Shown here: positions 15,438-60,600 of the stretch, piece after piece
Layout: every line of letters begins with the position of its first letter
Numbering within the stretch: the stretch's first letter is position 1
DNA from: Octopus bimaculoides
Lineage: Eukaryota
DNA: 64,000 nucleotides
NCBI RefSeq assembly: GCF_001194135.2
Contig: NC_069003.1
Location: 20,058,049-20,122,048 of the forward strand
Direction of reading: 5' to 3'
Position numbers and translations under genes: made by a program
The notes under the pieces: model-generated
Database searches by the model: none
Told to the model about the DNA's origin: nothing
What the model saw: the letters and a program-made list of their open reading frames with translations, nothing else

Positions 15438-18416
15438 TGAACATTAACAACCTCAATTTTCCTTGATCTCTTCATTGACAGTGTAGAGAAAGCATTATCC
15501 ACTGTTGCGTTTTGACATTTATGCTATCATGCATGATGTGATGTTACTTGTATAAAGGTGCAGATATAACCATGAGGTTCAGAAGCTTGCTTTGCTATGT
15601 GATTCTGGGTTCAGTTCCACTGCATAGCACCTTGGGCAAATGTCTTTTACTATAGCTTTGGGCTGAACAATACCTTTTGAGTATTATTCGGTAACCAGGA
15701 ACTATACCAAAGACCATCAATAAATTAATTAATTTTGTTTCCAATACATAGAAGAGTTTATAGCACAGTAAAGTCTCATAAGCAGAATAACCTACCTCTG
15801 ATCTTTAATCTCCCATCTTCCAAATCAACATCCCGGTTTACAGGATTACTAAACAACTAGATAGATACACTCATTGGATGGGTTCATAGAAATTTTTACA
15901 ACTGACTAAGCAATGTTTCTACTATGAATGTAGAAAATCTCTTTACTAATGTTTCTATATTGGGAATTGTAGGCATAACATTAGACCAAGTGTATGCACA
16001 CCCCTACAATAAAAGTACCCAATATGCCAAGAAACCTCATTAGAAAGTTCCTATTGGCTTGCACAACTAAGGTTCTCTTCCATTGCCTGCAAGGCAATTC
16101 ATAAATCCAAGAGAATGGAGTGGCCATGGATTTTGAACTTGGGGCCATATTTGTAGCCTTTTATGTGACTAGTGTTGAAAACAAGGTTCTTCCCAGACAT
16201 AAAGCCAAAACCATAGCTGTTACTAGCAAGCAGGTATGACTTGATAGTATGTATCATGCTTTCACTAATGATTTAGATATCTATATTGTCATGAGCAAAC
16301 GGAGATACCTTCCTGCGACTTGATCCAGAGGAACATCCAGGGGTGACAGCTGGCGGGAGAAAGAGCTGCACCAGTGCTAAGCTGGTATTTGTTTCCGGCT
16401 GAGTATACTGGTGCACTGTAAAATGAAGCACTCTGCTCAAGCAAACAACAATATGCCACTCTGTGAAGAAACTTTATGATAGAGGGCCCAGTACCCTAAC
16501 CACTTGGCTGTGCATTTTACATTCCTAAACATAACCACATCATATCTATACTTGTACATTGACAACATTGTGATGGTCACATAAAAACAGGCAGCTATTT
16601 AAAAAAATGGAAAAAGAAAAAACAATTCCATTTTACAATTCAATGTAGTTTCAGCAGAGATTCAGACCACATATTCTTAGATATAAATGTAGAAATAGAG
16701 AGGAATTTTCTATCACACCTTCACTTACATACTCTTAATGCACAGAGTTAGTGTATCCATTGAGATATAAAATTTCTATAGTAAAATCACTTCTAAAATA
16801 CTTCCTTAAATTTCCATTCATAAAAGCAGTTTTAAATAAGGAAAATCATTAACCCTCTTTTTTCTGTATTCCTGTTGAAATACACTGCTTTGTTTCAATT
16901 CATTTTGAAAATAATAAAGAATTTAGTAAAATAACTGTAGTTATTAAGGTGGCGAGCTGGCAGAATCGTTAGCATGCTGGGTAAAATGCTTAGCAGCTTT
17001 TCCTCCATCTCTATGTTCTAAGTTCAAATCCCACCAAGGTCAACTTTGCCTTTCTTCTTTTTGGGTTGATGAAATAAGTGCCAGTTGAACACTGGGGGTT
17101 GATGTAATCAACTTACCTCCTCCCTTGAACTTGCTGGCCTTGTGCCAAAATTCAAAATCATTATTAAATTGGAGTTTGAGACAAAAATTAATATAAAATT
17201 TTATTAGATGGTTTTAATGCAGATCAATTTAAAATATGAAGTTTGTGTCATGGATCCAGGGTTGAACCCAGGCAAGTTGATATAAAGAGTTAAAGTTAAA
17301 TTTCAGTTAATAACTAATTCTCTAACACATCAGACCAAGCTGTGGAACTGTACAAGAACAAATTCAACATTTAAGCAGCATGTATATAATGTGGTATATG
17401 TATCAGATGCAGCATAATTATACAATAGATGGATATGTCAAATAAAACAAAAAAACTCATAAAACAACACATATGTCACACTTCACCACAAACTAATAAT
17501 TAGAATAGATTACAAAAAACAGCAAAAATGAAGACAACCATCTCATCACAATGAAACTAGAACACCTGTAAGTCACAACATATTTGACACAACCAACGTA
17601 AATGTAAAGATTTTGACGTAAAACATGAAAGTTGTAAACTTCGTAACTCGTACAAGTACAATACTTTCTCATTCATTGACTGTGCTTTTACAAAGAACCA
17701 TTGGGGTTTTTGTCTGTCATAGTCAACTATGTATCTGTACTTATATGCACACTGGCTTGGACAAATTAAAAAAAAAAATCTTTCTTTCTTTTTCCTTGCC
17801 ACTTTTATTACTCAAGGGAAAAAGCTTTTTCTTAAGGGCTGAAACAAGCTTGACATTAATGTTATGGCAAGCTTTGTCATCAAAATGCAAAGAGCCAACA
17901 TAGATATCAAGGCAGCTCATCTAATACTGTAACAGTCCACTGCCCTGTATTGTTACTTTTTTTATTGATACTGAAAGGCTGAAATGCAAAAGTTGGCATT
18001 TGAATCCAGTAGGATATGAACTTGGAGCATGGAATTAAAACATTATAAGGCCGTCTGTCCAATATTTTAATGACTACCAACTTGCCAACATTACAAAATA
18101 TTAGAATATGGAATACGAAACAAAACTATGAAGAAACATTTATTAATTGATGGCACTACCATATTTAGAATTAGAATTTCTTAAAAAATGACAATATAAA
18201 CTTTAGCAGATTTATTAATAGCAAGATACAAACAAAATATTAACTCAGAGCTCATGTGAAATGAGTTTATCCAGGGTTAAGAAGTTAAGTGGCCTTCTCA
18301 ACCTTGTGATTTCTGGTTCAGAACCACTGCACTTCAGGCAAGTGTGTTCTATATCTCCAGGCTGACCAAAGCATTGTGAGTGAATTTGGTAGGTAGGAAC
18401 TGAAAGAAGACTGTCA

Positions 18417-19586: not shown

Positions 19587-22500
19587 ATGACAAACCCACT
19601 GTTGTGGACTAGCTTTATTTATTTGGCTGCTGTCATTTTTTTTCTTTGTTATATTCTATCTTGATAACCTATCATTTATCACTTTTCATCATCATCTTCA
19701 CTTTTATTTTGCTGTTTTATTATTATTATTTCTTTTTATATTTAAGTTTTTACTAACAGATGGAACTTCAGCCAGAAATTATATTTATATTGTGTAAATC
19801 AATCAAATAAATAAGTTTATTCTTTTAATCTCCAGTATATGTTTTTTCTCTGTTAACCCTTTTGTTACTATGTTTCTGATGATACACACTGCCTTTGTTT
19901 CAATTAATTTTCAAAATAATTTAGGAAAATTGCTTTGACATCATGAAGTTAATGTTTGGAACATAAATTAACATAAAATTTATGGAAAAAGGTTTTAATT
20001 TAGATCACTTTAAAATTGGAAATTTGTATCACAAGTAAGGGCAATCCCAGGTGAGTTACAATATTTAACCCTTTTGTTGCCATATTTCTGTTGATATACT
20101 CTGTTTTTGTTTCAATTAATTTTGAAAGTAATGAAGAATTTAGTAAAGTAACCTGGTCATTATTCAGCTGATGTTTGGAATAGAAGACAATTTTAATTTA
20201 GATCATTTTAAAACAGGAGGTTTGGATCATAGAACCAGGGGCAGTCTCAGGTAAGTTGTAAAACAGACAATATTTTAATGTTTTTGCTCCCATATATCTG
20301 TTGAAATACGCTGATTCCAAACAACAACAAACTGTAGTTAATTGACTTCTAGATGTGAAAGTTTACCCTTTAACATTCACATTACTCTGTTAGATGTAAT
20401 GCTTATTTATTCACATCGTTTTGAATTAATGAAGCATTACCTTGTAGCTTTGAGATTTTGATGACATGGTAGTTTATTTTTAGAATGACATTGTTGGGTA
20501 GGTATGTAGGGCTAGATCTGGCTACTTTTTGAACATAAAGCAGGTAGAAGATTATGGCTGGATTAAATGCTAAAGGGTTAAAGTTAATCCAAGTCAGATT
20601 AACCAAATTAAAAAACAAAACAGTATTAAATGAGCAAACTAATGCATGAATACAAATTAATTCAGGGATTAAAAAAAAATATTTTTGCTCATTTCTTCAT
20701 TCACTTTGTTTTAAAGAATTAAGTGGGATTGCGTAGGAGCATTGCCTATGAACTCGTAAGAGACAAATTGTAGATGAGGACCTTTGCTGCAGACTAGTTA
20801 CTGGACTGGTTGACAGAAAAGGGGACTTCCAGTCAGGTGGGAAAGAGACCCAGGCTTCAATAGTGGTTCGCTTCCTCACTCACGTTGTAGATGTTTAATA
20901 CACAATAAACACATCGTTTTTATGTTTATGTATAGCTTAATGGAAGCTAAAGTTGTACTTAATTTGGTAGGAATCATATAATAGCAGAGAAAGAGAAAGT
21001 CATTAGAAAACATTGACAGCTTGTTAAAAATCAAAATCAAATTCTGGTTGATGAGTAGTCTAAAAGGTTCTTCCATGCCCCCTTTATTTCTCCTACCAGA
21101 ACTTCACCATTTCACCACACCTCAACTGGTCTATGTTTTTCAAAACTCACCTGGGACTGCCCTCTGGTTTTATGATACAAAGTTCCTGTTTAAATTTGAT
21201 CTTAATTAGAACCCTTCATCAAAATGTCACATTAATTTATATTCCAAACATCAGCTTAATAATGGTTCCAAATTTTGGTACAAGGCTAGCAATTTCAAGG
21301 GAGAGGGGGTAAGCCAATTACATCGACCCCAGCACTCAACTGATACTTACTTTATTTACCCCAAAAGGATGAAAGGCAAAGTCAGTCTTGGCAGCATTTG
21401 AACTCAGAAATGTAAGGACAGGCGAAATGCTGCTAACTATATTGCCCAGCATGCTATTAATTCTACCAGCTCACTGCCTTCACAGCTTGATAATAATGAC
21501 AAAGATATTCTACTAAATTCTTCACAGGTGCAGGCTTAGCCATGCAATTAAGAAACTTGCTTTGCAACCATATGGTTTGAGGTTTGAGTCGCACTTTGAG
21601 CAAATGTCTTCTACATCTCTGAGCTGACCAATGCCTTGTGAGTGGATTTGGTGGATGGAAACTGTAGGAGCTTGTCACATGTGTATGTATATCTTTGTGT
21701 GTGTTTGTCCCCTAACCATCACTGCTTGACAACCAGCATTGTTTGTTTATGTTCTCATAACTTAGCAGTTTGGCAAACGAATGATAAAATATGTACTGGA
21801 AATAATTTGTTTGACTAAATCAATGGCTCTGAACCATTCTTTACCTATGGACCCTTTTGATTACTATTCTATTTTGGTAGACCCCCCATTGCCATTCACT
21901 GTTTAAAAAACTAGTTTTATAGATACTTCTTTTAAATTTACTATTTTGTTTTTCACTTGTGTAAGATGAATTATGTAAAGGCAGTGCCCCAGCACGGCCA
22001 CAAGTGAAAGATAAAGATTATTTTCAAAAATAATTGAAACAATGACAGTATATTTCAACAGAGTTATAGCAACAAAAGGATTAAGTGAATAATTTGAAAA
22101 ACAACAATGGCAAGAATAACAAGAAGAAAACTAGCTCCATTGAAAATGGGACCCTTTAGCATTCACATTATTCTGTCAAATGTAATGCTTATTTATTTAC
22201 ATTGTTTAGAATTAAATCACGCATTATCTTGTAGCTTTAAGATTTCAATGATGTGACTGTATCTTTTTAGAATGACATTGTAGGGTAGGTGTGAGAGGTT
22301 AGATCCGGTTAGTTTTAGCATAAAACTGGTCAAATATTTAAGCAGGATAGGGTTAAACTAAATATATACAAGACATTGGATAGGGGTTTGTATGAGTTGG
22401 GAGAATGTGAGAAATTAATTAAATAAATTAATTAGTTAATTTGAAAGCAGGTGGGGAAGGTGGAATTGTTGAAAGAGTGAAAGAGGCCTTGAAGAAAAAG

Positions 22501-23740: not shown

Positions 23741-25101
23741 TCTGAACAGAAATAACAGCAATAATATAACAACCAGTTAATGATGTGGATTGAAAAATAT
23801 CTCTAACATATAAATATAAACAAGTAACAGAATGCCGATATGCCTGGCAAACCGTGATGTTTAAGATGCATGCAGATTGATCATTAAACAAATTAGAAAT
23901 CTGATGATTACACTATGTATGAAAGGGCTAACTTTATGAGCATTACAAAATATTTTTTTTTAATGTAAAAATACCATAATAAAAAACGTGAAAACCAGAC
24001 CATGTTTTAACTTAATTCAACTGATATATATCTATATTGCTTTGGCAATTCATATACTAAAATGATAGAGATTGGCATGGCCCCTGTGCAAGGATCACAT
24101 GCAAATTTGTGAAGCATTCCATATTTTTCAGGCACAGGCATGGTTGTGTGATAACAAGTTTGCTTCCCCTCCGCATAGTTCTGGGTTCGGTCTCACACCT
24201 TCGGCAAGTGTCTTCTACTATAGTTTTGAGCCAACCAAAACCTTGTGAATGAATTTGATAGGCGAAAACTGAAAGAAGCCCATTGTGTGTGTGTGTACAT
24301 AATATATATATATATGTGTGTGTGTGATAAAGACACATACAGATATATATATATATATATATATCTGTATGTGTCTTTATCACACACACACATATATATA
24401 TGTACATATGTCTATGTATGTGTGACTTTGTATTTGCCCCCCCACCACCCCCACCACCACTGCTTGACAACTGGTGTTATTGTGTTTGCATCCCTGTAAC
24501 TTAGCAGTTTGGCAAAAGAACTAATAGAATAACTACCAGGTATTAAAAAAAAGCAGTACTGGGGTCAATCCATTCATTTGACTAAAGATTCAAGGCTGCA
24601 GTCTAATGATTGAAACACATAAAAGATATATATATATTTATATTTTCACATATGTGTGTGTGTGTGTGTGTGCATTTATATATATATATATACATACAAG
24701 TGTGTGTATAAGAGGTGAGGATAATGTGTATGCTTGTGTGTGTATGTGTGTGAAAGAGAAAGAGAGTGGTTAGTGAGACTGGCAGTGTGTTAGGTGTCTA
24801 TGTGTTTGTATGTACATGTATACCTTTGTGCGACTGAGTATGCAGCATTAGTTGGATATGCATGTGTGTGTGTGTGTGCTTGATGAGTTTCCACATAGTT
24901 TCCATCAATCAATTTTCCTTCACATGAAGACATCACTCAACAAACACTTTATAATATTCAGACTTTCCTGAAACAGTAAACTATGACACATCATGAGACT
25001 TCATCCATCACATCCATCCAAGATCTGTCTCTCCTGAGAAGCCATCTAGCTCTAAACAATACTGAAGCAATCTTTCTCTCATTCAGCCAAAATCACATTT
25101 A

Positions 25102-26584: not shown

Positions 26585-26999
26585 GTGAAGTATATTTGCC
26601 ACTTAAATGCAGCTAACCACTAAGGGTGAATGCTACTGTAGCTTGTAGCCCCAAGAGAACCCCTTCTCCAGCTGGCTATTGACACACTTTGTTTACACTT
26701 TTTCGAGATCGGTGATTTTTCGTCACTGGAAAAAGGATAAATATGTATTTGCATCAGGACTCCTTAACATCGAAGACCGGTGATTGTCGTACGCTGACAA
26801 AGGGTAAATATCCAGAAACTCAGGTCCGTGCATATCATGTCAGGTCGACGATGGGAAGGATGACTTCCCTTTGCAAATACTGATAGGGCACAGAAAGTGT
26901 GTCAATAGCCAGCTGGAGAAGGTGTTCTCCTGGGGCTACAAGCTACAGTAGCATTCACCCTTAGTGGTTAGCCGCATTTAAGTGGCAAATATACTTCAC
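26585..26999 (+). mobile_element. Penelope-pLTR/retrozyme-like element with 106-bp inverted arms
   Basis: 26585-26690 and 26894-26999 are reverse complements with 3 mismatches; hammerhead motif in spacer; abuts (TA)n; homologous to 58.3-kb element. Confidence 0.65.
26789..26831 (+). ncRNA. Minimal type I hammerhead ribozyme motif (G8A-mutated)
   Basis: GTACG-CTGACAA-AGGGTAAATATCCA-GAAA-CTCAGG-TC|CGTGC: stem I 5 bp, stem II GGGT/ATCC, stem III AC/GT, GUC cleavage triplet. Confidence 0.6.
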
Positions 27000-29399: not shown

Positions 29400-31025
29400 T
29401 ATATTTTACAAAGGATATTCCTTAATTCTTCCTCTCTGAAGATGAAATAGTTGGCTTATATGAAATTCTTTGCTAGAAAGAATCACTAAAATGAGTCTTT
29501 GTTGATGCAATGTGAAGTCTTGTATTACTCTTGAGCCTGGCGAAAGTTTTGCACTTTCTATTACATAATGCACAACTATGCTGGCTGGCAGAAGGAACAG
29601 GTGCCACAGTATGAACTCTTTTGACATGCCTTTTCAATCTTCCAACTGAGAGGCACACCTTTCCACTTGTTGCATATGTTCTGTTGTAAACAATAGCCAT
29701 ATCACAGTTTACCATGGATCAATTCCTGTGAGTTCTCTGATGGCTGACCAGGCCTGCACAACTCAAGCATCTCCTCCCACAAACCACACACACAAAAAGC
29801 AATTCTCCCTTATTCTCCACAGGTTCATTCCTTCTAAGCCTTCTTCTAATCTTCTTGTGCTTCATTGTCTCTCTTTCAAACCTTGAACAACCACTGTGCA
29901 CTCTCTTCCTCCATCCATCTCAGTCTTGTGCCTCTCTCTCTCTCAATCAACAACTGAAACACTTGTCTGTGTCAGAGCAATTCTGAGGCAGTCCTTGAAC
30001 CTCTATTTTGGGTTTATGTGCTGATCTCCTGCCATCTTCCAGCTCACCATACAAAAGTTGCTTAGGAAGTCTTTCACCATTCATTCTTACCAGATGTCCA
30101 CCCCACCTCAAGTGACTTTGCAGAATCATTAATTCTATACTTCTACTACAACTTCTCTCAAGTACCTCCACATCACTGATGGTCATTTTCCAATTTATCT
30201 CAAGAATTTTCCTAAGACAATATTGATGATATCGTTTCAAATACCTTAAATGCCTACGATAAACAACCCACATCTCACATTCATATAGCAAAGATGGCAG
30301 GACACGTGCTATCAACCCTAATTTTAATTTAGGAAGATATACTATGGTGTGATCAGACATGCCTGTCAAACCTACCAAAGGCACTCCTAGCCTTGCTGAT
30401 TCTATGTGAAATTTCATCATCAAGACCAGCGGTGTCAAAAGTACTTTCCAAATAAATGAATTTAATTACAACTTCTAACTTTTGACCATTCCTTCACAGT
30501 TATAGAAGGTTCCACATAAAGTTTAGAGGCAGGCTGGTATGTTAGAACAGTTTTTTTCAAGTTCATTGAAAGGCTCAATGCTGTACATGCTGCAGAAATC
30601 ATATTCATCATGTGTTGCATATCTTCTTGGGAATGTGCTAACAGGTCACAATCATCTGCATACAAGAACTCAATGGTGGAAGAATGAAGAACTTTCGTTT
30701 TGGCACAAAGTCTTTTGAGTTTGTAAAGGTTTCCTGCTGTCCTATATTTTATATAGACTCCTTCAGTGCAATCATCAAAAACTATTTGAAAGATTATTGT
30801 AAGATACAGAGCAAACAATGTAGGAGCAGGAATATCACCTTGTTTTACACTATTTTCTACAGAAATTGGATCTGACAAGGTACCTCCAATATTGACTCTC
30901 ACTTCCATCTTGTCATGTAATTGTCTAAGAATTCTCACAAATTTTTCAGGGCAGCCTAGCTTTTGCAGGATCTTCCAAAATGCAACTCTATTTATAGAAT
31001 CAATAAAAACCTGATGTAAATCCAT
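29400..31025 (-). mobile_element. 5'-truncated RTE-clade (BovB-like) LINE: RT core, thumb and C-terminal C2H2 fingers; decayed
   Basis: ORFs with VKQGDIPAPTLF, LYADDCDL, LLYECEMW, HLRWGGHLVRMNGERLPKQLLYGEL, CVVCGRRCLSCAGLVSHQRTH; frameshifts and stops. Confidence 0.9.
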
Positions 31026-33531: not shown

Positions 33532-33972
33532 TATATACACACATACATATATACATACACACACACACCTATATGCATACAACACATACACACATGTACA
33601 TATGTATGGATGTGTGTATGCATATTTCTTTGTTTATTAACATAAAAAGAAAAATCAATAGCCTTCATCATTGTGAGTAAAGCCACCTAAACTGTCTTAG
33701 CATATATTATTATATTTGCACAGTTGTCAAAGATGTCAGAATCTCAGGAATTGCAATGCAAAACTTAATTGGTTCCATATTGATCATTCATTTATTGATC
33801 AGTCACCATTGTATTAAAGATATTCAAATATCTTTTATGATATTGCTCCTCTTTTCTGTTTCAGTCTTTCATCTTATCTATGTTATGAACTTGATAATAC
33901 TTAAACTTCAATTACTAACTGTTATACTTCACTTATGCTTGTACTGCACTTACAAACACTTACATTTCTCTG

Positions 33973-37495: not shown

Positions 37496-40400
37496 ATGCC
37501 ATAACAGAGGCATTCAAAGACTAGCTATACATGGGAACTCCTGTACGCGGCCACTGACCCAATTCTTATAGCTGGATCAGTGAAAGAATTAAGACAAAAA
37601 TCTTAAACATAGAAGCAGCGCCTAGAATCATATGAACCTAGCAAAAACAAAAATCTTTATTTATTTGTAAAAATGCAGAACTTCATTGCCATCTTTGAAG
37701 TGACCAAGCTAGATATGCAGATAAAACGAAAGGCTGAAATTCTATACCATCTACCCAATGTAATGTAGGGTGAACAAGAGTTACATTTGGATCACAGACA
37801 GTCTGAAGAGAACTACATATGTAGCAGATGCACATAAATAGTTAGCAATAAGAGCAACTACGAAGTGAATTCTTTTAAATAACCAGAAGCCCCTTGGGAA
37901 GTAGGTGACAGCTTTGGTTCCCAAGATAACTTAATTCTTTTGTAACCATTTGAAATACACTGCTTTTGTTTCAATTAATTTTTTAAAATAATGAAGAATT
38001 TAGAAAAATAGCTTTGTCATTATTAAGCTGGTGTTTGGAACATAAATTGACATGAAATCTTAATGAAATGTTTTTAAGTTAGATAGTTTTAAATTAGGAA
38101 GCTTGTATCATAGATCTAGGAGTGGGGTGGTTTTCTCAGACAGGTTAGTATCAAAAAGGTTACATAGTAAAGAAGTATTCACCCCCAACCAAAGCAATCA
38201 GTACAGGATGGAAAATATTCAGGAAGTTACTACCTCTTCTGACAAGAAAGGGATTCTCTATTCACGTGAAGGGCATATTGGATGATGTTTGCGTTCTATG
38301 ATCCTGAATTAATTGTCTCGGAGGGATTAATTGGGGTTAAAAAGCTTTGATTATAAGCCGTAAAAAGCAACATCTAGAGGAACCAATATGAGAGTTATGT
38401 CCCATTAATATCATCGATAAGACTCCATAGGTTATGTCCCCTGTTATTTCCCAACTTCTATCCCTATGATTAATTTCTTTTTCTTTTTGTATGTATTTCC
38501 AGAAAAAATTAAGTAATATAAAAATATTTATGTATCCAAAGACACCAGGAAATAAGTTTTCAGATTTTAAGTGAACAGCGTATAATAGTATAGTATCTAG
38601 GATATTAGTTGTTATCTTTCTGTAAAGTTTACTTGTTGATTATATTTTTCTTGAAAATAAATGAATAAATAAGTCCGCATTATCGATTTAATGTCCAATT
38701 TTCCATGCTTGCATAGTAGGGTGGAGAGAACAAGATTTTTTTATCACCAAGATGTGTCAAGAATCACAAATTGGTTTACACAATTTTATTTTAATGCATG
38801 TGTAATCTAGACCTTATGTAACACATATTTTCGGTGACCTAGTATTAAAAATAATAAAGAAAACAAAGTTGAAGGGTCTATTTATTTCACATAATTTCAA
38901 GTGTGTTGTAGAGCCTGAAGATATAAATTTTAGAGATTGAGATTTTAACACTCTTGTTTTTAAAGGATTTTGCAAAACAAAATCGATTCATAACAATGAA
39001 TGTAAAAAATAAAATGAGGAATGACAAACTTGTTATAAATTGGTTCTTTGCTCATTATTCAAAATTTTAAGTGAACTGCTGAGCCTGAAGATGTAAATCT
39101 AAGAACTTTAGATTTTATCACAGTTGTTTTTAAAGAATTTCACAATAAAAAATATATTTTGGAAACATATTTTGAAAATCTGTGTAAAAATTACCTTTTT
39201 TGCTCCACCCTAGGTTGGACGCAGTATACTGAGGTAGGTCTTCTATGGCTGGATGCCCTTCCTGTCTCCAACACTTACCTGTTTCCAAGCAAGGTAATAT
39301 TTCTCTCCGTGGCTAGACAAGTTTTAGCAGAATAGTGGAAATAGATGACAATAATCACACAATGTTAAGACAGATGGATGAACACATGCACACACAAATA
39401 TACACAGTAACTGTTCCATCTTCATAATTGATTTCTAAGCATCCTCTTCTCAATGGCATTTCTTCCCTTCCATATATGACTATTCAGTCTCACTTCAGAT
39501 CTGTGTAGTTTGAAAAGTAGGTGACAGACGTAAGTTGTGACTTCCAGTGGATCCCTTTGTGACATAATAATCTCTGTGAACCACCATATGTTTCCTCAGA
39601 CACAAAATTGATTTGCAAGCCCTTTCATATGTCGAATCACACAGTCTAGGAAGAAGAACATTACATACAAGTAATCTTTCATGGGACATCAGATGGTTCA
39701 CATACCCAGTCTTGGAAAGGAGTACACAGCAGACATTTCACACCTCCAACATTTTATGTATTCATGGAGGTTCTAATGACAGCTGCTCTGAAGCCAGTGC
39801 TTTATGCATTTGTATTCAAGGTGACCCTCTTCAAAAGTTTTACAACCTTCCCTTATACACTTCTCATATAGTGATAATTACAACAACTGAGATAGTGCTG
39901 TAGTTAGAAGAGTGCTGGAAGAATGGATGATAAAATGATGAATTGTAGGGATGGATTGAATGTGACTTGAAAGACAAAATGATATGCTTTTAGGGCCTCA
40001 TTTTTTTGCAGTCTTCTCAAGCACTGCGAATCACCAGTCATCTCTTCCATAAGACTCAATATCCTGAGGTTGGTCATTACTTCATCTTCCCATGTCTCAC
40101 CCACATTTAATGACTAGCATGTCATTATGGAGCTGTCCACATCCTTAACTGTACAAGTGCCATCTTTGTCCTTGCACACTACATTTGATGCCTCTTATAT
40201 CTAGTTTTTTACCTTAATACTTTGCACTTTGTCATATATGCACACATCCAGCAGAGGATGCTAGCCTTATTCCATTTATATAGTGTAGCTGGGACAGCAA
40301 AAGTAAAATTGCTGTACTTTATGACAAACTTCAAACAGAGAATAAAACTACTCTTCACCAGAATCAAAAAATTTTGTTACACAAACCTAAACACTTATGC

Positions 40401-45646: not shown

Positions 45647-48618
45647 CAGGTCATTAAGAATGATATGTCTGATTTTCTTATGCACCAACTTTGACAGTCG
45701 TTAACTCTAATGTTTTATTCTGACAATTCTTTGTTTTACAACATTGAAGACTTACATCATTACTTTTTGAAATGCAATTCATGGTGTCTGATTATATTGT
45801 GAGTTTTCCCTTGTAAATCAATTTTTGTGAATCCATGGATAGATAAAAAATTTGTGTTGTTTATGAATATGAGTTCCGTCGTGGAACCAATGCATCCCAG
45901 ACAGCTTGAAGCATCAGTGAGGTGTTTGGTGAAGATGCGGGGATTGAACGCACAGTACGTCAATAGTTTGAGATGTTCCAGTCTGGAACTCTTGAAAATT
46001 AGCCCCATAGTAGACCTGAGACCAAGTAGATGATGATGAGTTGGAAATTGTAGTGGAAGTGGATAGATCTCAAACTACACGTGAGTTAACAGTAAGGTTT
46101 GATGTTCTGATCCCAACTGTATTGGACCATCTGAAACAAATTGGCAAGGTAAAGAAGCTGGACAAGTGGGTACCACACGAACTGAACGAGCATCAAACAA
46201 CACATTGTCTTGAAACTTGCTGTTCTTTACTGTCATGGCATAAAAGCAAACCATTTTTGCATCATATTGTTACGTGTGATGAAAAATGGATTCTTTTCAA
46301 CAATAGCAAGTGTTCTGCATGGTGGTTGGATAGAGACAAAGTGACAAAACACAATCCAAAAAAGAATATTCACCTAAAAAGCTAATAGTGTCTGTTTGGT
46401 GGTCCAGTGCTGGTGTCATCCACTATAGCTTCATGAGATCTGGTAAGTCAATTACAGTGGATGTATACATCAACCAATTGGATGAAATGATGAGTGAACT
46501 TGGAATGAAACAACTGAGATTGCTCAATAGAGACAGGCCAATTCTCTTGCAAAACAATCCTTGGCCACATGTTGCACAAAGAACGCAGCACCTGATGAAC
46601 CAGAAGACTGCATCAAGCTCTAATGTCTGCTATGCTATGGTTTCTGCTGCTGAATGCCCTAATGCCAGTCACCCACTTTACAGGGTGTACTGGGTGCTTT
46701 TTACTTAGCCTCAGCACCAGCAGGGCCATGTAAAGAGTAACCCACAAGGCAAGACACCTCAACTAAAGTGGGGTAGTATTGAGAAATGTAGCTTTGTGCC
46801 TGGGGGACAGAAACAGATTTTTTACTGTAGAGGAGGTACATGGCTTAAAGACCTCCTTCTGTCAGGAATGACCATGGTATTGCACCTAGAAAGTTACCCT
46901 CCAAGACATAAGTCCAGGTAAGATTATTTATGGAAGATCAGCAGTCACCCATGCATTCCAGCTTCCCCTCTTCATGCCACTGATGTTATCTAAGGGAAAA
47001 GCAATGGGTGAGACAGCTTGGCACTAGTGACATTGCTACAGCTGAGTGAACTGGATCAATGTGAACTAAAGTATCTTGTTCAAGAACACTACACAGCCCA
47101 GTCTTGGAATCAAACTTACTACCTCATGATTGTGAGTCCAATGCTCTAAGCACTAAACCATGTGAGCCCACCTAGATATACATAATCTTTATCAGCATTG
47201 TTTTATACCCACTTTTCATGCTGGCATGAATTGGATGGGTTGCAGGAAGACTGCTTCTTGCTTGCATTTCATTTTTGGAATGGTTTCTATAGCTAGACAT
47301 CCTTCCTAATACTATCTATTTTACAGAATGTACTTGGGGTGTTTTTCATGGAACCAGTTTGTAGAGAGGTGGGCATGTCTTTGACATGACTACTCTGGCC
47401 TGCATGGGTGGTGGACTTAATCCATCACCACCACATGGTCCTAGGTTGCTTTTAGCAAAGGTGTCCACTCTGTTGTTGTAAGAATTTAAGTCAGGTCTGC
47501 AGTTTGAGGATACCTTCCTCCGTCCTTCTCTTCAGTCTTGGAGGCTGTTCAAAAGTCTTACAAAACATTCCCTGTCCCTTAGTGCAAAGAAATCATGAAA
47601 TCTTCTTTTGAAGATTGTAAAAATGTGGTTTTAAAGGAAATCTGTCTGCCATTATTAAAAGGTTGATTGAGAACCCATTCTTTGCTTGTGATTTGACTGT
47701 TTAATTTCTTGTTTTTTCTTTTCATGTTCTTATTTTTAGACCAAATGGAATCATTGCATATGATGTTAATGAATTACCATCAAAAAGTGCCAATCTGTTA
47801 CCAGAATACACCAATCCTCCATGGATGTTGGAACAAGTAGGTTGTTGTTGTTAATCTTGTTTCTTGTTTATAGATTCTTATGTTGAGAAAAAACATCAGA
47901 TTGCAATTCACTCCCAATAAACGGTAATTGCTCAGTCTTCTTGAAGTTCTGGATCTGCCATATGTACAGCTTTAAGAAAAGGTGGCTGGAGTGAAGCTAA
48001 TCAACATAGATTGAACAAAAACTGGATTATGAGTCATTATATCCTTGTCCTTTTTTTTTCCCCGCTGGCTTGGGTTGGATAATACAACAGGAACTGACAA
48101 ACGATGGGACTGCACTGAGCTCCAACGTGCTTTGGCATGGTTTATACAGCTGGATATCTTTCATAATGCCAACCACATTTTTCATAGCACCAGCATCAGT
48201 GAGGTCACCAAATAGCTTGTGAGATGAGACCCGTCAACTAAGTGGCAGTTTTGAGAGAGATGAAAGTATGTGTGTGTGTGTATTGTACATGCATACATGC
48301 TTGCATATATTGTATATGCATATATTGTACATGCATGTATTGCATGTGCATATACATGCATGCATATATTGTAAGAATGTAATTTTAATGTCCACTTTTC
48401 CGTGCTTGCAAAGGTCGGATGGAGTTTATTGAGGCAAATTTTTCTACAGACAGATGTCCTTCCAGTTGCCAGCCCTCATCTATTATTAAGTTAGGGAATA
48501 TTTCTCTATTGCTTGACAAGTTTTCACAGAATATTGCAAATGAATGAGATTCATTTACAGCAATTGCACAATGACAAGACAAGGAAACAATACACATTAT
48601 ACACACAATTATGTACAT

Positions 48619-57600: not shown

Positions 57601-60600
57601 ACATATTATTGAACCATTGTTTTAAAGCCAGTTGCCCTTTCTGTCATTAATTAACCTTCACCTAGTTTTTGAGTAAGGGATTTATTTTTATTCTCTACAT
57701 CTTTGGAAGTGTAGAGCTGGTGGAAGATTTGTTGACTGGGAATTATCAACATAGTTCACTGTTTCATGTTTATGTGTGTGTACGTGTGTGTTTCTTTCTC
57801 TCTCTTTATGTCTGTGTGTATTTCTCTATAAGTCTCTCTTTTTCTCTTTCTTTTATTTGTTTGTCTCTTTCTCTCTTTGTATGTATGTATGTATGGCTCT
57901 CTCACACTCTCTCTTTCTCTTCTGAACTCCCCTTTCTCTCCCTTTTTCCCTCTCTCATCTCTTCCCACTCTCCCATCTCCCTCCCTCTCTGCCCTTCTCT
58001 CCTTCCCTCTCTCTCCCTCTCTCTTCTTGTATATGTCTTTACCTTTCTGTTGTTCTCTATCTTTATTTTGCTTCCCAGAACAAGCATCTTACAATCAGCT
58101 ACCAAAATCTTCAACATCAACAACGAAGAAGACATGTGCAAATGAAGAGGTTCCGGACCAGCAGACTAGCAAGTTAGATGCTATGGTGAATATTTACTTC
58201 ATAATTTTTTTCTTTAACTCTTTCATTACCATACTTTCTTTGAAATACACTCTTTGTTTCAATTAATTTTGAAAATAATGAAGAATTTGTAGTAAAGATT
58301 GTTTGCCAACACAACATGGCAGTCCTGGTTTAGGACGAATGTTGCTGTAATTTAACCCCAGGAGACATCGTCCCCAGCTGGCTATACGACATGATCTGTG
58401 TCCTTATATTTTCGAACAAGGGAATCTAGCACTCCTACTCAGCTCAAAACAATATCTGTGTATCACGATTTCCAAGTTATTTCCTTCATCAGCACAGAAT
58501 AATTGTTTGGCTAGAGGTGGCGCTACCAAATTCCTGTTTGAAATGTATAGTTTTCAAAGTGACAACTAGTCACTGATCTATAAATTAGAAAATTACTATT
58601 TTTAAATCTCACAGCGTGAGATATTCAGCAACAGTACTTTGTAGTAAAGATTGTTTGCCAACATAACATGGCAGTCCTGGTTTAGGACGAATGTTGCTGT
58701 AATTTAGCCCCAGGAGACATTGTCTCCAGCTGGCTATATGACACGATCTGTGTCCTTATTTTTTTGAACAAGGGAATCCAGCACCCCCACTCAGCTCAAA
58801 ACGTTGTGAGATTTAAAAATAGTAATTTTCTAATGAAGAATTTATTCAAATAACTTTATCATTCTTAACCTGATGTTTGGAATATAAATGAACATGAAAT
58901 TTTGATGGAAGGTTTTAATTTAGATGACTTTAAAAAGGGAAGTTTGTATCATGGAACCAGGGGACAATTTCAGGTGAGTTGGTATCAAAGGGGTTCAAAG
59001 AGTGCTTAATATTAATCTTTATATCTTTTAGCTGTTTCCATCATTGAACTGTGGCCATGCTGAGGCACTGTCTTGAAGGGTTGAGTTAAACAAATTGACC
59101 CCAGTACTTACTTTTAACCCTTTAGCATTTAAACCAACCATATCTGGCCAAAATATTCTACCTGTTTTATGTTCAAACCAACCAGATCTGGCATCTCATG
59201 CCAACCCTAAAATGTCATTCTAAAAACAAATGGTTACCTCATCAAAATCTCAAAACTATAAGATAATGCATAATTAATTCAAAACTGTGAATGCTAAAGG
59301 ATTAAACCTGGTACTTATTCTGTCAGTCTCTGCTGAACTAAGTTACAGGGATGTAAACAAACCAATACCAGTTGTGAAGTGGTGGTGGTGGTGGACAAAC
59401 ACAAAAAGGCACACACACACATTCCCATACATCACTTTCTAGTATATTATGGTTGCATAACGAAATACAGTGTCCCTACACATCATTAATATTCACATAC
59501 ATATATGTACGACAGGCTTCTTTCAATTTCTGTCTAAATCCACTCACAAGGCTTTGGTAGACCCACAGCTATCATGAAAGATATATGCCTAAAATGCCAT
59601 GTAGTGGGACCTTACCTATGAAAATGAAGATATTGGAAGGGGTCTATTAGTAGCAGAAATAGTTACCAAACCCCTGAAATTCTAACCTTAGAAACAGAAC
59701 TTGCTGCTCTAAGACAACACTTTTGTAACTGCTTCAGATTTTGCTTGTATATTTGTTTCAGAGACCCAGACGAAAGCGTGTAAAAGATGATGAGGGTTTC
59801 TGGGTTTGTGATACGATTTCTAAAGACAAAACAGCCGAGGTAAATCTTGATTTTTTAATCTTTTATTTTCTGCTATTTCTTTAGTAAATATATCGTCATT
59901 ATCGTCATTTAACATCCATTTTTCATGCTGGCATGGATTGGATGGTTTAACAGGATCCAATGAGCTGTAGGGCTGCATTGTGCTCCAATGTCAGCTTTGG
60001 CATGAATTCTTTAGCTGAATGCCCTTTCTTATGCCCACCACTTTACAGTGTGTACTGCATGCTTTATTAGGCCACTAGCTCTAGGAGGTTTACCAAGTAA
60101 TTTACATGAAAAGGAAAAAGGGAGAAAAGGAAAAGCCTTCCTTGACTAAGTGGGAAGTATTAGAGAAGGTGGAATGGTGGCTTTATGCCAGGGGTAAACA
60201 GTGGCGTCTTGCTATGGGGAAGATACATGACTACTCCACATTTATATAAGAGTGGGCGGGAGTTAAGGTATGCAAGTATTTCAAAATATCTCACAGAGTG
60301 ATGACCGTTCCCTGCATAGTTACAGGCTGCTCTTTGGTAAGGCATGGCACCCGTTCAGCCACCCTGCCAGGGATATGGTGAAATGATGGGACTGCAGCAT
60401 GGCAGATTGTGAAGAGGTAGTGGAAGAGCTCAACTGAGCCAATGATGCTTCTTATATTGATGCTGAGCGGAAGAACCCTAGAAGATCAATGGTCAAGGTT
60501 AGGGCAGCAAGCTGGCAGAAACGTTAGCACACTGGGCGAAATGCTTAGCGGTATTTCGTCTGTCGCTACGTTCTGAGTTCAAATTCCGCCGAGGTCGACT

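What the first reader, a model, noticed from the sequence alone, without database searches (positions are those of the whole stretch)
58276..58843. Retrozyme/Penelope-pLTR-like element: 352-nt hammerhead-bearing monomer in partial tandem, with inverted tail and 13-bp TSD
Seen: a ~545-nt insert interrupts a MITE in MYSM1 intron 9 and is flanked by TAATGAAGAATTT on both sides. It has two 162-nt direct repeats 352 nt apart (~93% identical) and a perfect 30-nt inverted copy of an internal segment at its right end. On the minus strand at 58455-58498 it reads TCTGTG-CTGATGA-AGGAAATAACTTG-GAAA-TCGTGA-TA|CACAGA, a type I minimal hammerhead with a near-palindromic stem III (ATCGTGAT, one transition from ATCGCGAT). 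Established: minimal type I hammerheads with palindromic helix III, partial tandem pLTRs and inverted tails characterise Penelope-like elements; animal non-LTR retrozymes are few-hundred-nt hammerhead monomers that yield circular RNAs. Inference: this is a non-coding, self-cleaving, probably circRNA-forming mobile family; I do not know of it being described in cephalopods.
Basis: partly seen in the sequence, partly recalled or inferred. Interest (0 to 1): 0.82.

Follow-up and report, generated by a model that had tools for sequence, protein, structure and literature searches.

The report
Octopus Penelope-type hammerhead retroelement copy
This is an old, decayed copy of a small non-coding mobile element in an Octopus bimaculoides MYSM1 intron; it carries a hammerhead-ribozyme relic and the insertion scars typical of Penelope-like retrotransposons, so it is a real but already known kind of element.

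Summary
A 542-nt insert (58289-58830) lies between perfect 13-bp duplications. Uninterrupted copies of the host repeat show the empty site. The insert is 1.46 tandem units of 352 nt plus a 30-34-nt inverted tail.

The minus-strand hammerhead motif is very unlikely to be chance, at about 0.005 expected per window. It lies at the position homologous to a cleaner minimal hammerhead in a related O. bimaculoides family. It is also the top window hit of a covariance model built only from that family (15.6 bits, E about 0.04).

Helix II is defective, and Rfam Hammerhead_1 does not score the motif. The locus holds a single ribozyme, antisense to MYSM1.

The window is O. bimaculoides CM046623.1. O. vulgaris and O. 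sinensis carry the same insertion with one unit deleted, so it predates their split.

Partial tandem, head-to-head copies, two clustered 3' ends about 53 nt apart (a "tail"), an AT-rich target and no poly(A) all point to Penelope-type mobilisation. No partner element, tandem array or circular RNA could be shown.

Verdict: new member of a known kind, of modest interest.

The parts
58276..58288 (.). Left target-site duplication, TAATGAAGAATTT
   Evidence: Exact 13-bp repeat. It occurs once in uninterrupted host-repeat copies.
58289..58450 (-). Body copy B1, the 3'-terminal 162 nt of the unit in the ribozyme-sense (minus) orientation. The element's 3' end is ...CAAUCUUUACUAC at 58289 (RT start zone 1).
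   Evidence: 93% identical to 58641-58802. Its 3' terminus is homologous to the outer ends of L004 74826 and L004 99368.
58361..58375 (-). Conserved stem-loop of the body module: GGAGAC-ATC-GTCCCC here, and the perfect GGAGAC-ATT-GTCTCC in B2 at 58713-58727.
   Evidence: The module is shared with the window 26585-26999 element and with L004b. The 5-bp stem is 100% paired in 7 sequences, and 2 pairs change on both sides.
58455..58498 (-). Minimal type I hammerhead relic. Helix I is 58498-58493 with 58460-58455. CUGAUGA is 58492-58486, the helix II region 58485-58473, GAAA 58472-58469, the helix III insert UCGUGA 58468-58463, U16.1 58462 and A17 58461. The predicted cleavage site is between 58461 and 58460.
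   Evidence: chance 0.005 per window; top hit of model R1, 15.6 bits, E=0.044; 97.7% of cells paired, 9 of 11 pairs changed on both sides; positional homology with the L004b hammerhead; the paralogue reads CGCG.
58499..58587 (-). Spacer of the unit, between the tail region and the hammerhead in sense order.
   Evidence: Present once in the insert. No ORF, tRNA or Rfam match.
58588..58640 (-). Tail region, lying between the two zones where copies end. It contains the hairpin TCTCAC-AGC-GTGAGA at 58607-58621 and is the source of the inverted tail.
   Evidence: inverted repeat I1. It is homologous to L004 98786-98834, where the hairpin is AAATCTCTC-A-GAGAGATTT. The long arms of L004b and of the L007 43.5-kb copy end within about 8 nt of the 58588 equivalent.
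58641..58802 (-). Body copy B2, the upstream partial unit. It is truncated at the equivalent of 58450, 10 nt 3' of the predicted cleavage site, and has no hammerhead.
   Evidence: In O. vulgaris and O. sinensis only one B copy remains at this locus.
58801..58830 (+). Inverted tail, a reverse-complement copy of 58588-58617. It joins B2 through a 2-nt overlap (AC) and overlaps the duplication by TAAT.
   Evidence: 34 nt, 97%. It is conserved in the O. vulgaris and O. sinensis orthologues.
58831..58843 (.). Right target-site duplication, TAATGAAGAATTT
26585..26999 (.). Member of a related family. Two 115-nt inverted arms (94% complementary) lie 185 nt apart, next to a (TA)n tract, and share the body module. 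No hammerhead was seen.

Best explanation
The insert is a fixed, ancient copy of a non-autonomous, non-coding retroelement of the Penelope-like (pLTR-derived, SINE-like) kind. Its sense strand is the window's minus strand, antisense to MYSM1.

In sense order the 352-nt unit runs: tail region with a hairpin, then spacer, then a minimal type I hammerhead, then a 162-nt body with a conserved stem-loop.

**Shown**
- It is a true insertion with a 13-bp duplication in AT-rich DNA.
- It consists of body-(tail/spacer/hammerhead)-body plus a short inverted piece.
- Related O. bimaculoides families have the same collinear layout, cleaner hammerheads, and head-to-head pairs of 5'-truncated copies.
- The 3' ends of copies fall in two zones about 53 nt apart, on either side of the hairpin.
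- The same insertion is present in O. vulgaris and O. sinensis, with exactly one unit missing.

**Inferred**
- A Penelope-like RT/GIY-YIG protein supplied in trans cut both target strands 13 bp apart.
- It primed cDNA from both ends at internal sites of a longer-than-unit (tandem) RNA. One cDNA ran 1.46 units and the other only 30 nt. The two joined by microhomology.
- The hammerhead, which can only form a stable helix III as a dimer, would process multimeric transcripts of tandem master copies.
- This copy is inert. It has a single ribozyme, a C-to-U change in helix III, and what looks like a 1-nt loss in helix II.
- The one-unit loss in the vulgaris/sinensis lineage came from recombination between the two body repeats.
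For: - **Insertion and anatomy:**
- **Motif not due to chance:**
- **Independent model:** a covariance model built only from the two L004b hammerheads ranks 58498..58455 first in an exhaustive scan of the window, at 15.6 bits and E=0.044. The same model finds the Rfam-grade L001 hammerhead at 21 bits.
- **Pairing:** across four hammerheads, 97.7% of cells are paired and 9 of 11 pairs change on both sides; 0 of 500 shuffles reach this.
- **Unit homology:** the whole unit aligns collinearly with the L004b arm, score 79 against 8.8 +/- 3.9 for shuffles. The hammerheads are therefore positionally homologous.
- **Paralogue:** the copy at L004 74546-74826 is a head-to-head pair and reads AUCGCGAU.
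- **Dimer folding:** restoring CGCG gives a predicted dimer with an 8-bp helix III, favoured by 9.9 kcal/mol over two monomers, against 2.8 for the observed sequence.
- **Related copies:** L004b and the L007 43.5-kb copy are head-to-head pairs in (TA)n or with a 9-bp duplication. Each has one arm about 55 nt longer, running through the hairpin.
- **Published Penelope signatures:** partial tandems, an adjacent inverted 5'-truncated copy and a 30-40-bp tail at one end (PMC8557442). Cleavage and extension of both strands, internal RT initiation at two sites in a stem-loop, and an AT-rich ATT target (PMC11167929). Minimal dimeric hammerheads with palindromic helix III (PMC4209133).
- **Octopus has such elements:** a canonical Penelope-like remnant with a GIY-YIG end and flanking minimal hammerheads lies in the same gene, at L007 33040-33880. 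Penelope families are recently active in Octopus (PMC13282606).
- **Not a SINE:** no tRNA-like head, Rfam tRNA match or poly(A).
- **Orthologues:**
Against: - No autonomous partner sharing the unit's 3' region was found. The one Penelope remnant available shows no similarity to it.
- Helix II is 3 bp with a G.U pair and an unpaired G. It lacks the G10.1-C11.1 pair and the long helix II typical of Penelope hammerheads.
- Rfam Hammerhead_1 gives nothing at E<=10. It also misses the cleaner L004b motifs, so this negative is weak.
- The covariation set is small, and all but the window motif were first found with a descriptor that demands helix I pairing.
- The 5' junctions of three arms map to 58450, 58454 and 58481. 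None coincides with the predicted cleavage site (58461|58460), so nothing shows that cleavage shaped the template.
- Only two loci of this exact family were available, and only one contains the 5' half of the ribozyme. The family consensus is therefore unknown.
- A short inverted 5' piece could also arise by LINE-type twin priming.
Confidence: 0.72

Rival explanations
1. The family is a true non-LTR retrozyme. Tandem master arrays would be transcribed and cut by the hammerhead into 352-nt monomers. These would be ligated into circular RNAs, which then serve as rolling templates for reverse transcription. The 1.46-unit insert would be a product of that process.
For: Unit size (352 nt) and GC content (39%) fit published animal retrozymes (PMC7229834). 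The insert is longer than one unit. The hammerhead is of the dimer-dependent type. Retrozymes are now argued to be non-autonomous derivatives of Penelope-like elements (bioRxiv 10.64898/2026.07.22.740005), so this overlaps with the best explanation.
Against: No array with two or more hammerheads was seen in about 196 kb of O. bimaculoides DNA. Published retrozymes carry canonical type I hammerheads with loop-loop contacts, whereas this one is minimal with a poor helix II. Head-to-head truncated pairs and defined 3' end zones need no circle. No RNA data were available.
Confidence: 0.15
2. The element is an ordinary SINE-like element mobilised by a LINE (RTE, CR1 or Dong-R4). The inverted tail would come from twin priming, the partial tandem from template jumping, and the hammerhead would be an inherited passenger or irrelevant.
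For: Octopus genomes are rich in SINEs and LINEs (PMC13282606). A 13-bp duplication also fits LINE endonuclease staggered nicks. Microhomology (TAAT) at the tail-target junction is what twin priming predicts. In L001 a hammerhead sits behind a tRNA-like head.
Against: There is no tRNA-like head, no A or B box and no poly(A) or simple-repeat 3' tail. Head-to-head structures occur in 3 of 5 superfamily loci seen. The two 3' end zones around a hairpin match the Penelope tail. Insertion into (TA)n and AT-rich ATT sites fits Penelope-type targeting.
Confidence: 0.1
3. The hammerhead-like string is a chance resemblance inside an otherwise unrelated repeat.
For: Rfam gives no match. Helix II is poor. 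The descriptor used for the chance estimate was written after seeing the motif.
Against: Only 0.005 such motifs are expected per window. It is the top hit of a model built from another family. It is positionally homologous to the L004b hammerhead within a collinear unit. The CGCG palindrome is present in the paralogue.
Confidence: 0.03

Closest known systems
Minimal type I hammerheads of Penelope-like elements and their truncated or SINE-like derivatives (Cervera & de la Pena 2014, PMC4209133)
   Same: Both have a CUGAUGA...GAAA core and a 6-bp helix I. In both, helix III is reduced to A-U around a self-complementary insert, so only a dimer is stable. Both occur in flanking repeats, as single dispersed motifs, or as two motifs close together on opposite strands. 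Both show high sequence turnover with compensated stems.
   Different: Helix II here is 3 bp with an unpaired 3' G. Published examples have 6-8 bp, G10.1-C11.1 and an extra base after A9. The element has no RT/EN ORF.
Penelope-like element insertion structure: pLTR partial tandems, inverted 5'-truncated copy, 30-40-bp tail (Craig et al. 2021 PMC8557442; Frangieh et al. 2024 PMC11167929)
   Same: The insert is a partial tandem with an inverted piece at the upstream end. The 3' ends fall in two zones flanking a stem-loop. The target is AT-rich and contains ATT. There is no poly(A).
   Different: The unit is 352 nt and non-coding. The interval between the two end zones is about 53 nt rather than 30-40. 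The inverted piece is only the distal 30-34 nt. No partner element was identified.
Animal non-LTR retrozymes (Cervera & de la Pena 2020 PMC7229834; Li et al. 2026 bioRxiv 10.64898/2026.07.22.740005)
   Same: Both are non-coding units of a few hundred nt with low GC and a type I hammerhead. Both have duplications longer than 4 bp and are linked to Penelope-like elements.
   Different: Retrozymes are tandem arrays with a canonical hammerhead in every unit and demonstrated circular RNAs. Here there is one minimal, defective ribozyme in 1.46 units, and there is no RNA evidence.
Schistosoma Sm-alpha-type SINEs with a hammerhead (knowledge of the field; cited in PMC4209133)
   Same: Both are short, abundant, non-autonomous repeats carrying a type I hammerhead. 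The L001 element found here (tRNA-like head plus Rfam-grade Hammerhead_1) is of this type.
   Different: The window element has no tRNA-like head or pol III boxes.

Membership tests
Hammerhead ribozyme, type I (Rfam RF00163) | Conserved core CUGANGA ... GAAA, with a non-G base at position 17 before the cleavage site | tested here: met
   CUGAUGA at 58492-58486, GAAA at 58472-58469, A17 at 58461.
Hammerhead ribozyme, type I (Rfam RF00163) | Open helix I formed by the 5' and 3' flanks | tested here: met
   UCUGUG/CACAGA forms 6 Watson-Crick pairs. 5 of the 6 positions change on both sides relative to L004b and L001.
Hammerhead ribozyme, type I (Rfam RF00163) | Stable helix II (usually 4 bp or more) closed by G10.1-C11.1 | tested here: not met
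   Only A-U, G.U and G-C pair, and a G is left unpaired before G12. RNAfold gives no hairpin for this segment. The model alignment shows a 1-nt gap in the 5' strand.
Hammerhead ribozyme, type I (Rfam RF00163) | Score at or above Rfam's gathering threshold (34 bits) | tested here: not met
   No hit at the gathering score or at E<=10 on 701 nt. As controls, the L001 motif scores 43.1 bits, while the L004b motifs are also missed.
Hammerhead ribozyme, type I (Rfam RF00163) | Self-cleavage at the predicted site | not testable with these tools
   This needs in vitro transcription of monomer and dimer constructs.
Penelope-type minimal hammerhead (PMC4209133) | Helix III reduced to 1-2 bp, with palindromic 15.2-16.2 or loop 3, allowing a dimer | tested here: met
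   AUCGUGAU is self-complementary with two G.U pairs. The paralogue reads AUCGCGAU. The predicted dimer has an 8-bp helix III.
Penelope-type minimal hammerhead (PMC4209133) | [quoted passage not shown] | tested here: not met
   The unpaired base lies on the 3' side and the stem is 3 bp. The genuine Octopus Penelope-flank motifs at L007 33805 and 33109 do show A + GGCUG/CAGCU.
Penelope-type minimal hammerhead (PMC4209133) | Families of motifs with compensatory changes | tested here: met
   9 of 11 pairs change on both sides across 4 motifs from 3 families. The sample is small and partly selected by a descriptor.
Penelope-like element insertion (PMC8557442, PMC11167929) | Partial tandem giving pseudo-LTRs | tested here: met
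   Body-internal-body arrangement: 165-nt repeats 352 nt apart, inside one target-site duplication.
Penelope-like element insertion (PMC8557442, PMC11167929) | Inverted 5'-truncated copy and/or a 30-40-bp tail at one end, reflecting two RT start sites near a stem-loop | tested here: met
   The 30-34-nt inverted piece ends at the 58588 equivalent. Related copies are head-to-head, with one arm about 55 nt longer through the hairpin. The interval is longer than published tails.
Penelope-like element insertion (PMC8557442, PMC11167929) | RT plus GIY-YIG ORF, or a partner element sharing the mobilised ends | tested here: inconclusive
   The unit has no ORF. A Penelope remnant with a GIY-YIG end exists 2.7 kb beyond the window, at L007 33160-33603, but shows no similarity to the unit. 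The genome could not be searched.
Animal non-LTR retrozyme (PMC7229834; bioRxiv 10.64898/2026.07.22.740005) | Tandem repeat with a complete hammerhead in at least two consecutive units | tested here: not met
   There is one hammerhead. The second unit is truncated 10 nt 3' of the cleavage site. No arrays were found in the loci fetched.
Animal non-LTR retrozyme (PMC7229834; bioRxiv 10.64898/2026.07.22.740005) | Circular RNA of unit length | not testable with these tools
   No RNA data can be searched by nucleotide sequence here.
tRNA-derived SINE mobilised by a LINE | tRNA-like head with A and B boxes, and a LINE-like or A-rich 3' tail | tested here: not met
   ARAGORN finds nothing in 58000-59100. 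Rfam gives no tRNA match at E<=10. The 3' end ...CTTTACTAC abuts the duplication directly.

The most novel reading that the evidence does not exclude
The window copy may belong to a very abundant, so far unrecognised Octopus superfamily of hammerhead-bearing, Penelope-dependent non-coding elements. I saw about 5 loci from 3 families in about 196 kb, which would scale to tens of thousands of copies. These may currently be filed among 'unclassified SINEs'. Their two conserved stem-loops would mark the RT entry sites, and young tandem members may still cleave and produce circular RNAs in octopus tissues.
Probability: 0.25. Interest if true: 0.55.

Novelty: new member of a known kind. Interest (0 to 1): 0.35.

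Why it matters
The copy links three things in an octopus genome: a hammerhead relic, a small non-coding repeat, and Penelope-type insertion scars.

If the superfamily is as common as the few loci here suggest, part of the large 'unclassified SINE/unknown' fraction of Octopus repeats could be reclassified as Penelope-dependent elements.

The two clustered 3' ends around a conserved hairpin offer a natural-history test of the internal-initiation model, which was derived in vitro from a lizard element.

For MYSM1 itself the insert is intronic, antisense, old and probably neutral.

Tried and rejected
- **Rfam:** searches at the gathering score and at E<=10 found no ribozyme in the insert. Controls showed that this is a weak negative.
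- **tRNA-like head:** ARAGORN found none.
- **More copies in the window:** only a shared 55-nt module at 26.6-26.9 kb turned up.
- **Six-frame 'spurious ORF' search:** one hit, the artefactual C-terminus of UniRef A0A0L8FIX1. This led to the second family copy.
- **First protein search with the MYSM1 exon:** it missed the Octopus orthologues even though they are in the collection. The exhaustive representative search found them.
- **JGI metagenome scan for AACTTGGAAATCRYGATACACAGA:** no match.
- **PRUNE2 loci:** those of O. sinensis, O. vulgaris and one Argonauta gene were too long to fetch.
- **Back-translating the peptide tail IVLS*:** this failed until the DNA showed a head-to-head junction.
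- **MAFFT alignment of the short hammerheads:** it misaligned them. I used a model-based alignment instead.
- **Idea that hammerhead cleavage set the 5' ends of copies:** rejected as unsupported. The junctions lie at 58450, 58454 and 58481, whereas the predicted cleavage site is 58461|58460.
- **The L007 Penelope remnant as partner element:** no similarity to the unit.
Full report
**What is in the sequence**

TAATGAAGAATTT occurs at 58276-58288 and again at 58831-58843. Between them lie 542 nt (58289-58830). Two direct repeats, 58286-58450 and 58638-58802, are 165 nt long, 93% identical and 352 nt apart. The stretch 58801-58834 is the reverse complement of 58584-58617, with 33 of 34 positions matching. 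The 11 differences between the direct repeats are 10 transitions and 1 transversion, and 4 of them are at CpG sites. That is ordinary decay in a CpG-depleted genome.

A reconstructed empty site aligns without interruption to three other copies of the host repeat in the window (37930-38130, 20050-20265, 19835-20060). Each of these carries a single TAATGAAGAATTT. The 13 bp is therefore a genuine target-site duplication, and the 542 nt is one insertion event.

**Where the window comes from**

Window 33558-64000 is 100% identical to locus L007, which is Octopus bimaculoides GCA_001194135.2 CM046623.1:20091606-20136219. The gene is MYSM1, as named by NCBI and UniRef for the Octopus proteins. It has a SWIRM exon in the window. 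Mapping the O. bimaculoides protein back onto the window places the insert between coding exon 9 (58078-58185) and coding exon 10 (59762-59839), about 100 nt after the exon 9 donor site. The gene is on the plus strand and the ribozyme-sense strand of the insert is the minus strand. The host pre-mRNA therefore carries only the antisense of the motif.

**The hammerhead motif**

The minus strand at 58498..58455 reads UCUGUG CUGAUGA AGGAAAUAACUUG GAAA UCGUGA U A CACAGA.

- Helix I is 6 Watson-Crick pairs, and the core boxes are intact.
- Helix III is one A-U pair around UCGUGA, which is self-complementary if two G.U pairs are allowed.
- Helix II is the weak point. Only A-U, G.U and G-C can pair, and a G is left unpaired before G12.

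Rfam finds no hammerhead at its gathering score, and none at E<=10 on 701 nt. In 400 simulated windows that preserve dinucleotide content, a motif with helix I of at least 6 bp and a self-complementary helix III insert of at least 4 nt appeared 0.005 times per window. None also had a helix II of at least 3 bp. I wrote that descriptor after seeing the motif, so I looked for independent evidence.

**Related copies**

A six-frame translation of the insert matched the last 47 residues of a UniRef O. bimaculoides gene model (A0A0L8FIX1). That C-terminus turned out to be a read-through into a copy of this family in a PRUNE2 intron. The copy, at L004 74546-74826, consists of two 5'-truncated arms joined head to head. 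The arms correspond to window 58364-58481 (92% identical) and 58454-58291 (95% identical). With CGCG restored, the predicted dimer forms an 8-bp intermolecular helix III and is favoured by 9.9 kcal/mol over two monomers, against 2.8 for the observed sequence. Both arms end before the CUGAUGA box, so this copy says nothing about the 5' half of the ribozyme.

**A related family with a cleaner ribozyme**

The same 118-kb locus holds a second element, L004 98786-99373, which I call L004b. It is a head-to-head pair with 201-nt arms (91% complementary), inserted in a (TA)n tract. Each arm carries UCCAGA CUGAUGA (U/C)GAGCAAAGACUCA GAAA CAUG UC UCUGGA.

The window unit, permuted to run from upstream of the hammerhead through the body into the tail, aligns collinearly with an L004b arm. 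The score is 79, against 8.8 +/- 3.9 for shuffled sequence. The two hammerheads therefore occupy homologous positions in homologous units.

I built a covariance model from the two L004b motifs alone. An exhaustive scan of the window with that model puts 58498..58455 first, at 15.6 bits and E=0.044, aligned over the full model length with a 1-nt gap in the 5' strand of helix II. The same model finds a motif in another cephalopod's MYSM1 intron (L001 11957-12001) at 21 bits. Rfam itself scores that motif as Hammerhead_1 at 43.1 bits. Rfam misses the L004b motifs, so its silence on the window motif is not decisive.

On the model-based alignment of the four motifs, 97.7% of cells are paired and 9 of 11 pairs change on both sides; no shuffle out of 500 reaches this. 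Two caveats apply. The set is small, and the alignment is fitted to the structure.

Counting motifs across all the cephalopod DNA fetched gives several further examples. Two of them flank a Penelope-like remnant with a GIY-YIG end at L007 33040-33880, which lies 2.7 kb beyond the window's end. Canonical Penelope-like elements with minimal hammerheads therefore exist in this very gene.

**Insertion anatomy and mechanism**

In sense (minus-strand) order the insert is: inverted tail (58830-58801), body B2 (58802-58641), internal region (58640-58451, containing the tail source, spacer and hammerhead), then body B1 (58450-58289).

The main copy ends at ...CUUUACUAC (58289). The outer ends of the L004 family copy (...CUUUACUC) and of the short L004b arm (...CAACUACU) are homologous to this end. 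The inverted tail ends at the equivalent of 58588, about 53 nt further along the unit. The long arms of L004b and of another copy, at L007 43500-43880, end within about 8 nt of that point. Between the two zones lies a hairpin: TCTCAC-AGC-GTGAGA here and TCTCTC-A-GAGAGA in L004b, a compensated change.

These features match published Penelope-like element signatures:

- partial tandems, an adjacent inverted 5'-truncated copy and an optional tail at one end (PMC8557442);
- cleavage and extension of both target strands, and internal RT initiation at two sites in a stem-loop (PMC11167929);
- a preference for AT-rich ATT targets (PMC11167929).

There is no poly(A), no tRNA-like head and no ORF. A second stem-loop in the body (GGAGAC/GTCTCC) is 100% paired in seven sequences from three families, with two compensated pairs.

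The inferred sequence of events is as follows. A trans-acting Penelope-type RT/endonuclease makes cuts staggered by 13 bp. It primes cDNA on both strands from a longer-than-unit RNA. The two cDNAs join through a 2-nt overlap.

The 5' junctions of three arms (58450, 58454, 58481) lie near the predicted cleavage site (58461|58460) but not at it. I therefore do not claim that ribozyme cleavage shaped the template.

**Age**

O. vulgaris (L006) and O. sinensis (L008) carry the same duplication, one body copy and the same inverted tail at the orthologous site. They lack exactly one 352-nt unit. The internal region cannot arise by duplication of a body copy. The simplest reading is therefore an ancestral 1.46-unit insertion followed by recombination between the two body repeats in the vulgaris/sinensis lineage. 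At the 11 sites where B1 and B2 differ, the single body copy matches sometimes one and sometimes the other. This is expected if most of those differences arose later.

The insertion thus predates the split of these species, which is given as 13-33 million years in PMC13282606. The internal region has no orthologue, so the ancestral state of helix II cannot be recovered from these data.

**Comparison with known kinds**

The element works like, and most likely is, a non-autonomous derivative of Penelope-like elements carrying a minimal type I hammerhead. That kind was described across metazoans in 2014 (PMC4209133) and was recently tied to animal retrozymes (PMC7229834; bioRxiv 10.64898/2026.07.22.740005).

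- It fails the helix II criteria of both canonical and Penelope-type hammerheads.
- Hammerheads have been counted in a cephalopod genome before: 235 Rfam hits in the giant squid (PMC6962438).
- Penelope-like elements are known to be active in Octopus (PMC13282606).
- I found no paper describing this family or superfamily.

**Verdict**

This copy is an old, inert relic. It is a new member of a known kind and of modest interest. The main open point is whether the apparently abundant Octopus superfamily still has intact, tandem, cleaving members.

Noticed in passing
window 24036-24128 (+): U6 snRNA match at 57.2 bits (gathering score 44) with internal gaps relative to the model. It lies in repeat-rich sequence about 20 kb upstream of MYSM1 and could be a gene or a retro-pseudogene.
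   Followed up: no
window 26585-26999: Element with 115-nt inverted arms (94% complementary) 185 nt apart, next to a long (TA)n tract. It shares the 55-nt body module and its stem-loop with the finding but has no hammerhead core. It is probably a head-to-head pair from a sister family.
   Followed up: partly
L004 98786-99373 (O. bimaculoides PRUNE2 intron): Head-to-head pair from a related family in (TA)n. Each arm has a cleaner minimal hammerhead (UCCAGA CUGAUGA UGAGCAAAGACUCA GAAA CAUG UC UCUGGA) that Rfam Hammerhead_1 does not detect at E<=10.
   Followed up: yes
L004 74546-74826; protein UniRef A0A0L8FIX1: The last 47 residues of this 2015 O. bimaculoides gene model translate an intronic copy of the family, running across its head-to-head junction (...FQVI|IVLS*). 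The current RefSeq isoforms do not contain this stretch, so it is an annotation artefact.
   Followed up: yes
L001 11860-12001 (unidentified cephalopod-like contig, ENA ERZ21867824): A tRNA-like head (GGTGGCTCAGTTGTAGAG...GGTTTGATCTCCAG) is followed directly by an Rfam-grade Hammerhead_1 (43.1 bits). This SINE-plus-hammerhead sits in the intron after the MYSM1 SWIRM exon of another species. A Penelope-like RT/GIY-YIG remnant lies at L001 7131-8179.
   Followed up: partly
L007 33040-33880 (equivalent to about 2.7-3.5 kb beyond the window's end): 5'-truncated canonical Penelope-like remnant. Its ORF ends at 33603 and contains the GIY-YIG motif CVYSIPCSCGRLYKGKT. It is flanked by inverted repeats that each carry a minimal hammerhead (GACAC CUGAUGA A GGCUG...CAGCU GAAA CG UU GUGUU). 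A tRNA-like SINE fragment is inserted in its 3' region.
   Followed up: partly
L007 43500-43880: Another head-to-head copy of the L004b-like family, with a 9-bp duplication (GAACCTAGT). Its hammerhead has lost the CUGAUGA box through a 10-nt deletion.
   Followed up: partly
L006 23596-23800 and L008 23595-23800: The O. vulgaris and O. sinensis orthologues of the insertion keep the duplication, one body copy and the inverted tail. They lack exactly one 352-nt unit, which resembles solo-LTR formation.
   Followed up: yes
window 16944-17156: A different copy of the host repeat is interrupted by a typical tRNA-derived Octopus SINE (GGTGGCGAGCTGGCAGAATCGTTAGC...GTTCAAATCCCACC). It is unrelated to the finding.
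   Followed up: partly
window 29947-31025 (-), 12973-13407 (+), 46041-46708 (+), about 580-1250: A LINE reverse-transcriptase fragment (RVT_1, E=2.9e-11), two mariner-type transposase fragments (Transposase_1), and an assembly gap of 669 N.
   Followed up: partly
L005 34284-34334 (Argonauta hians): Hammerhead-like motif with a CUGAAGA core, a 10-nt palindromic helix III insert (CCGAUAUCGG) and a 9-bp helix I. Context not examined.
   Followed up: no
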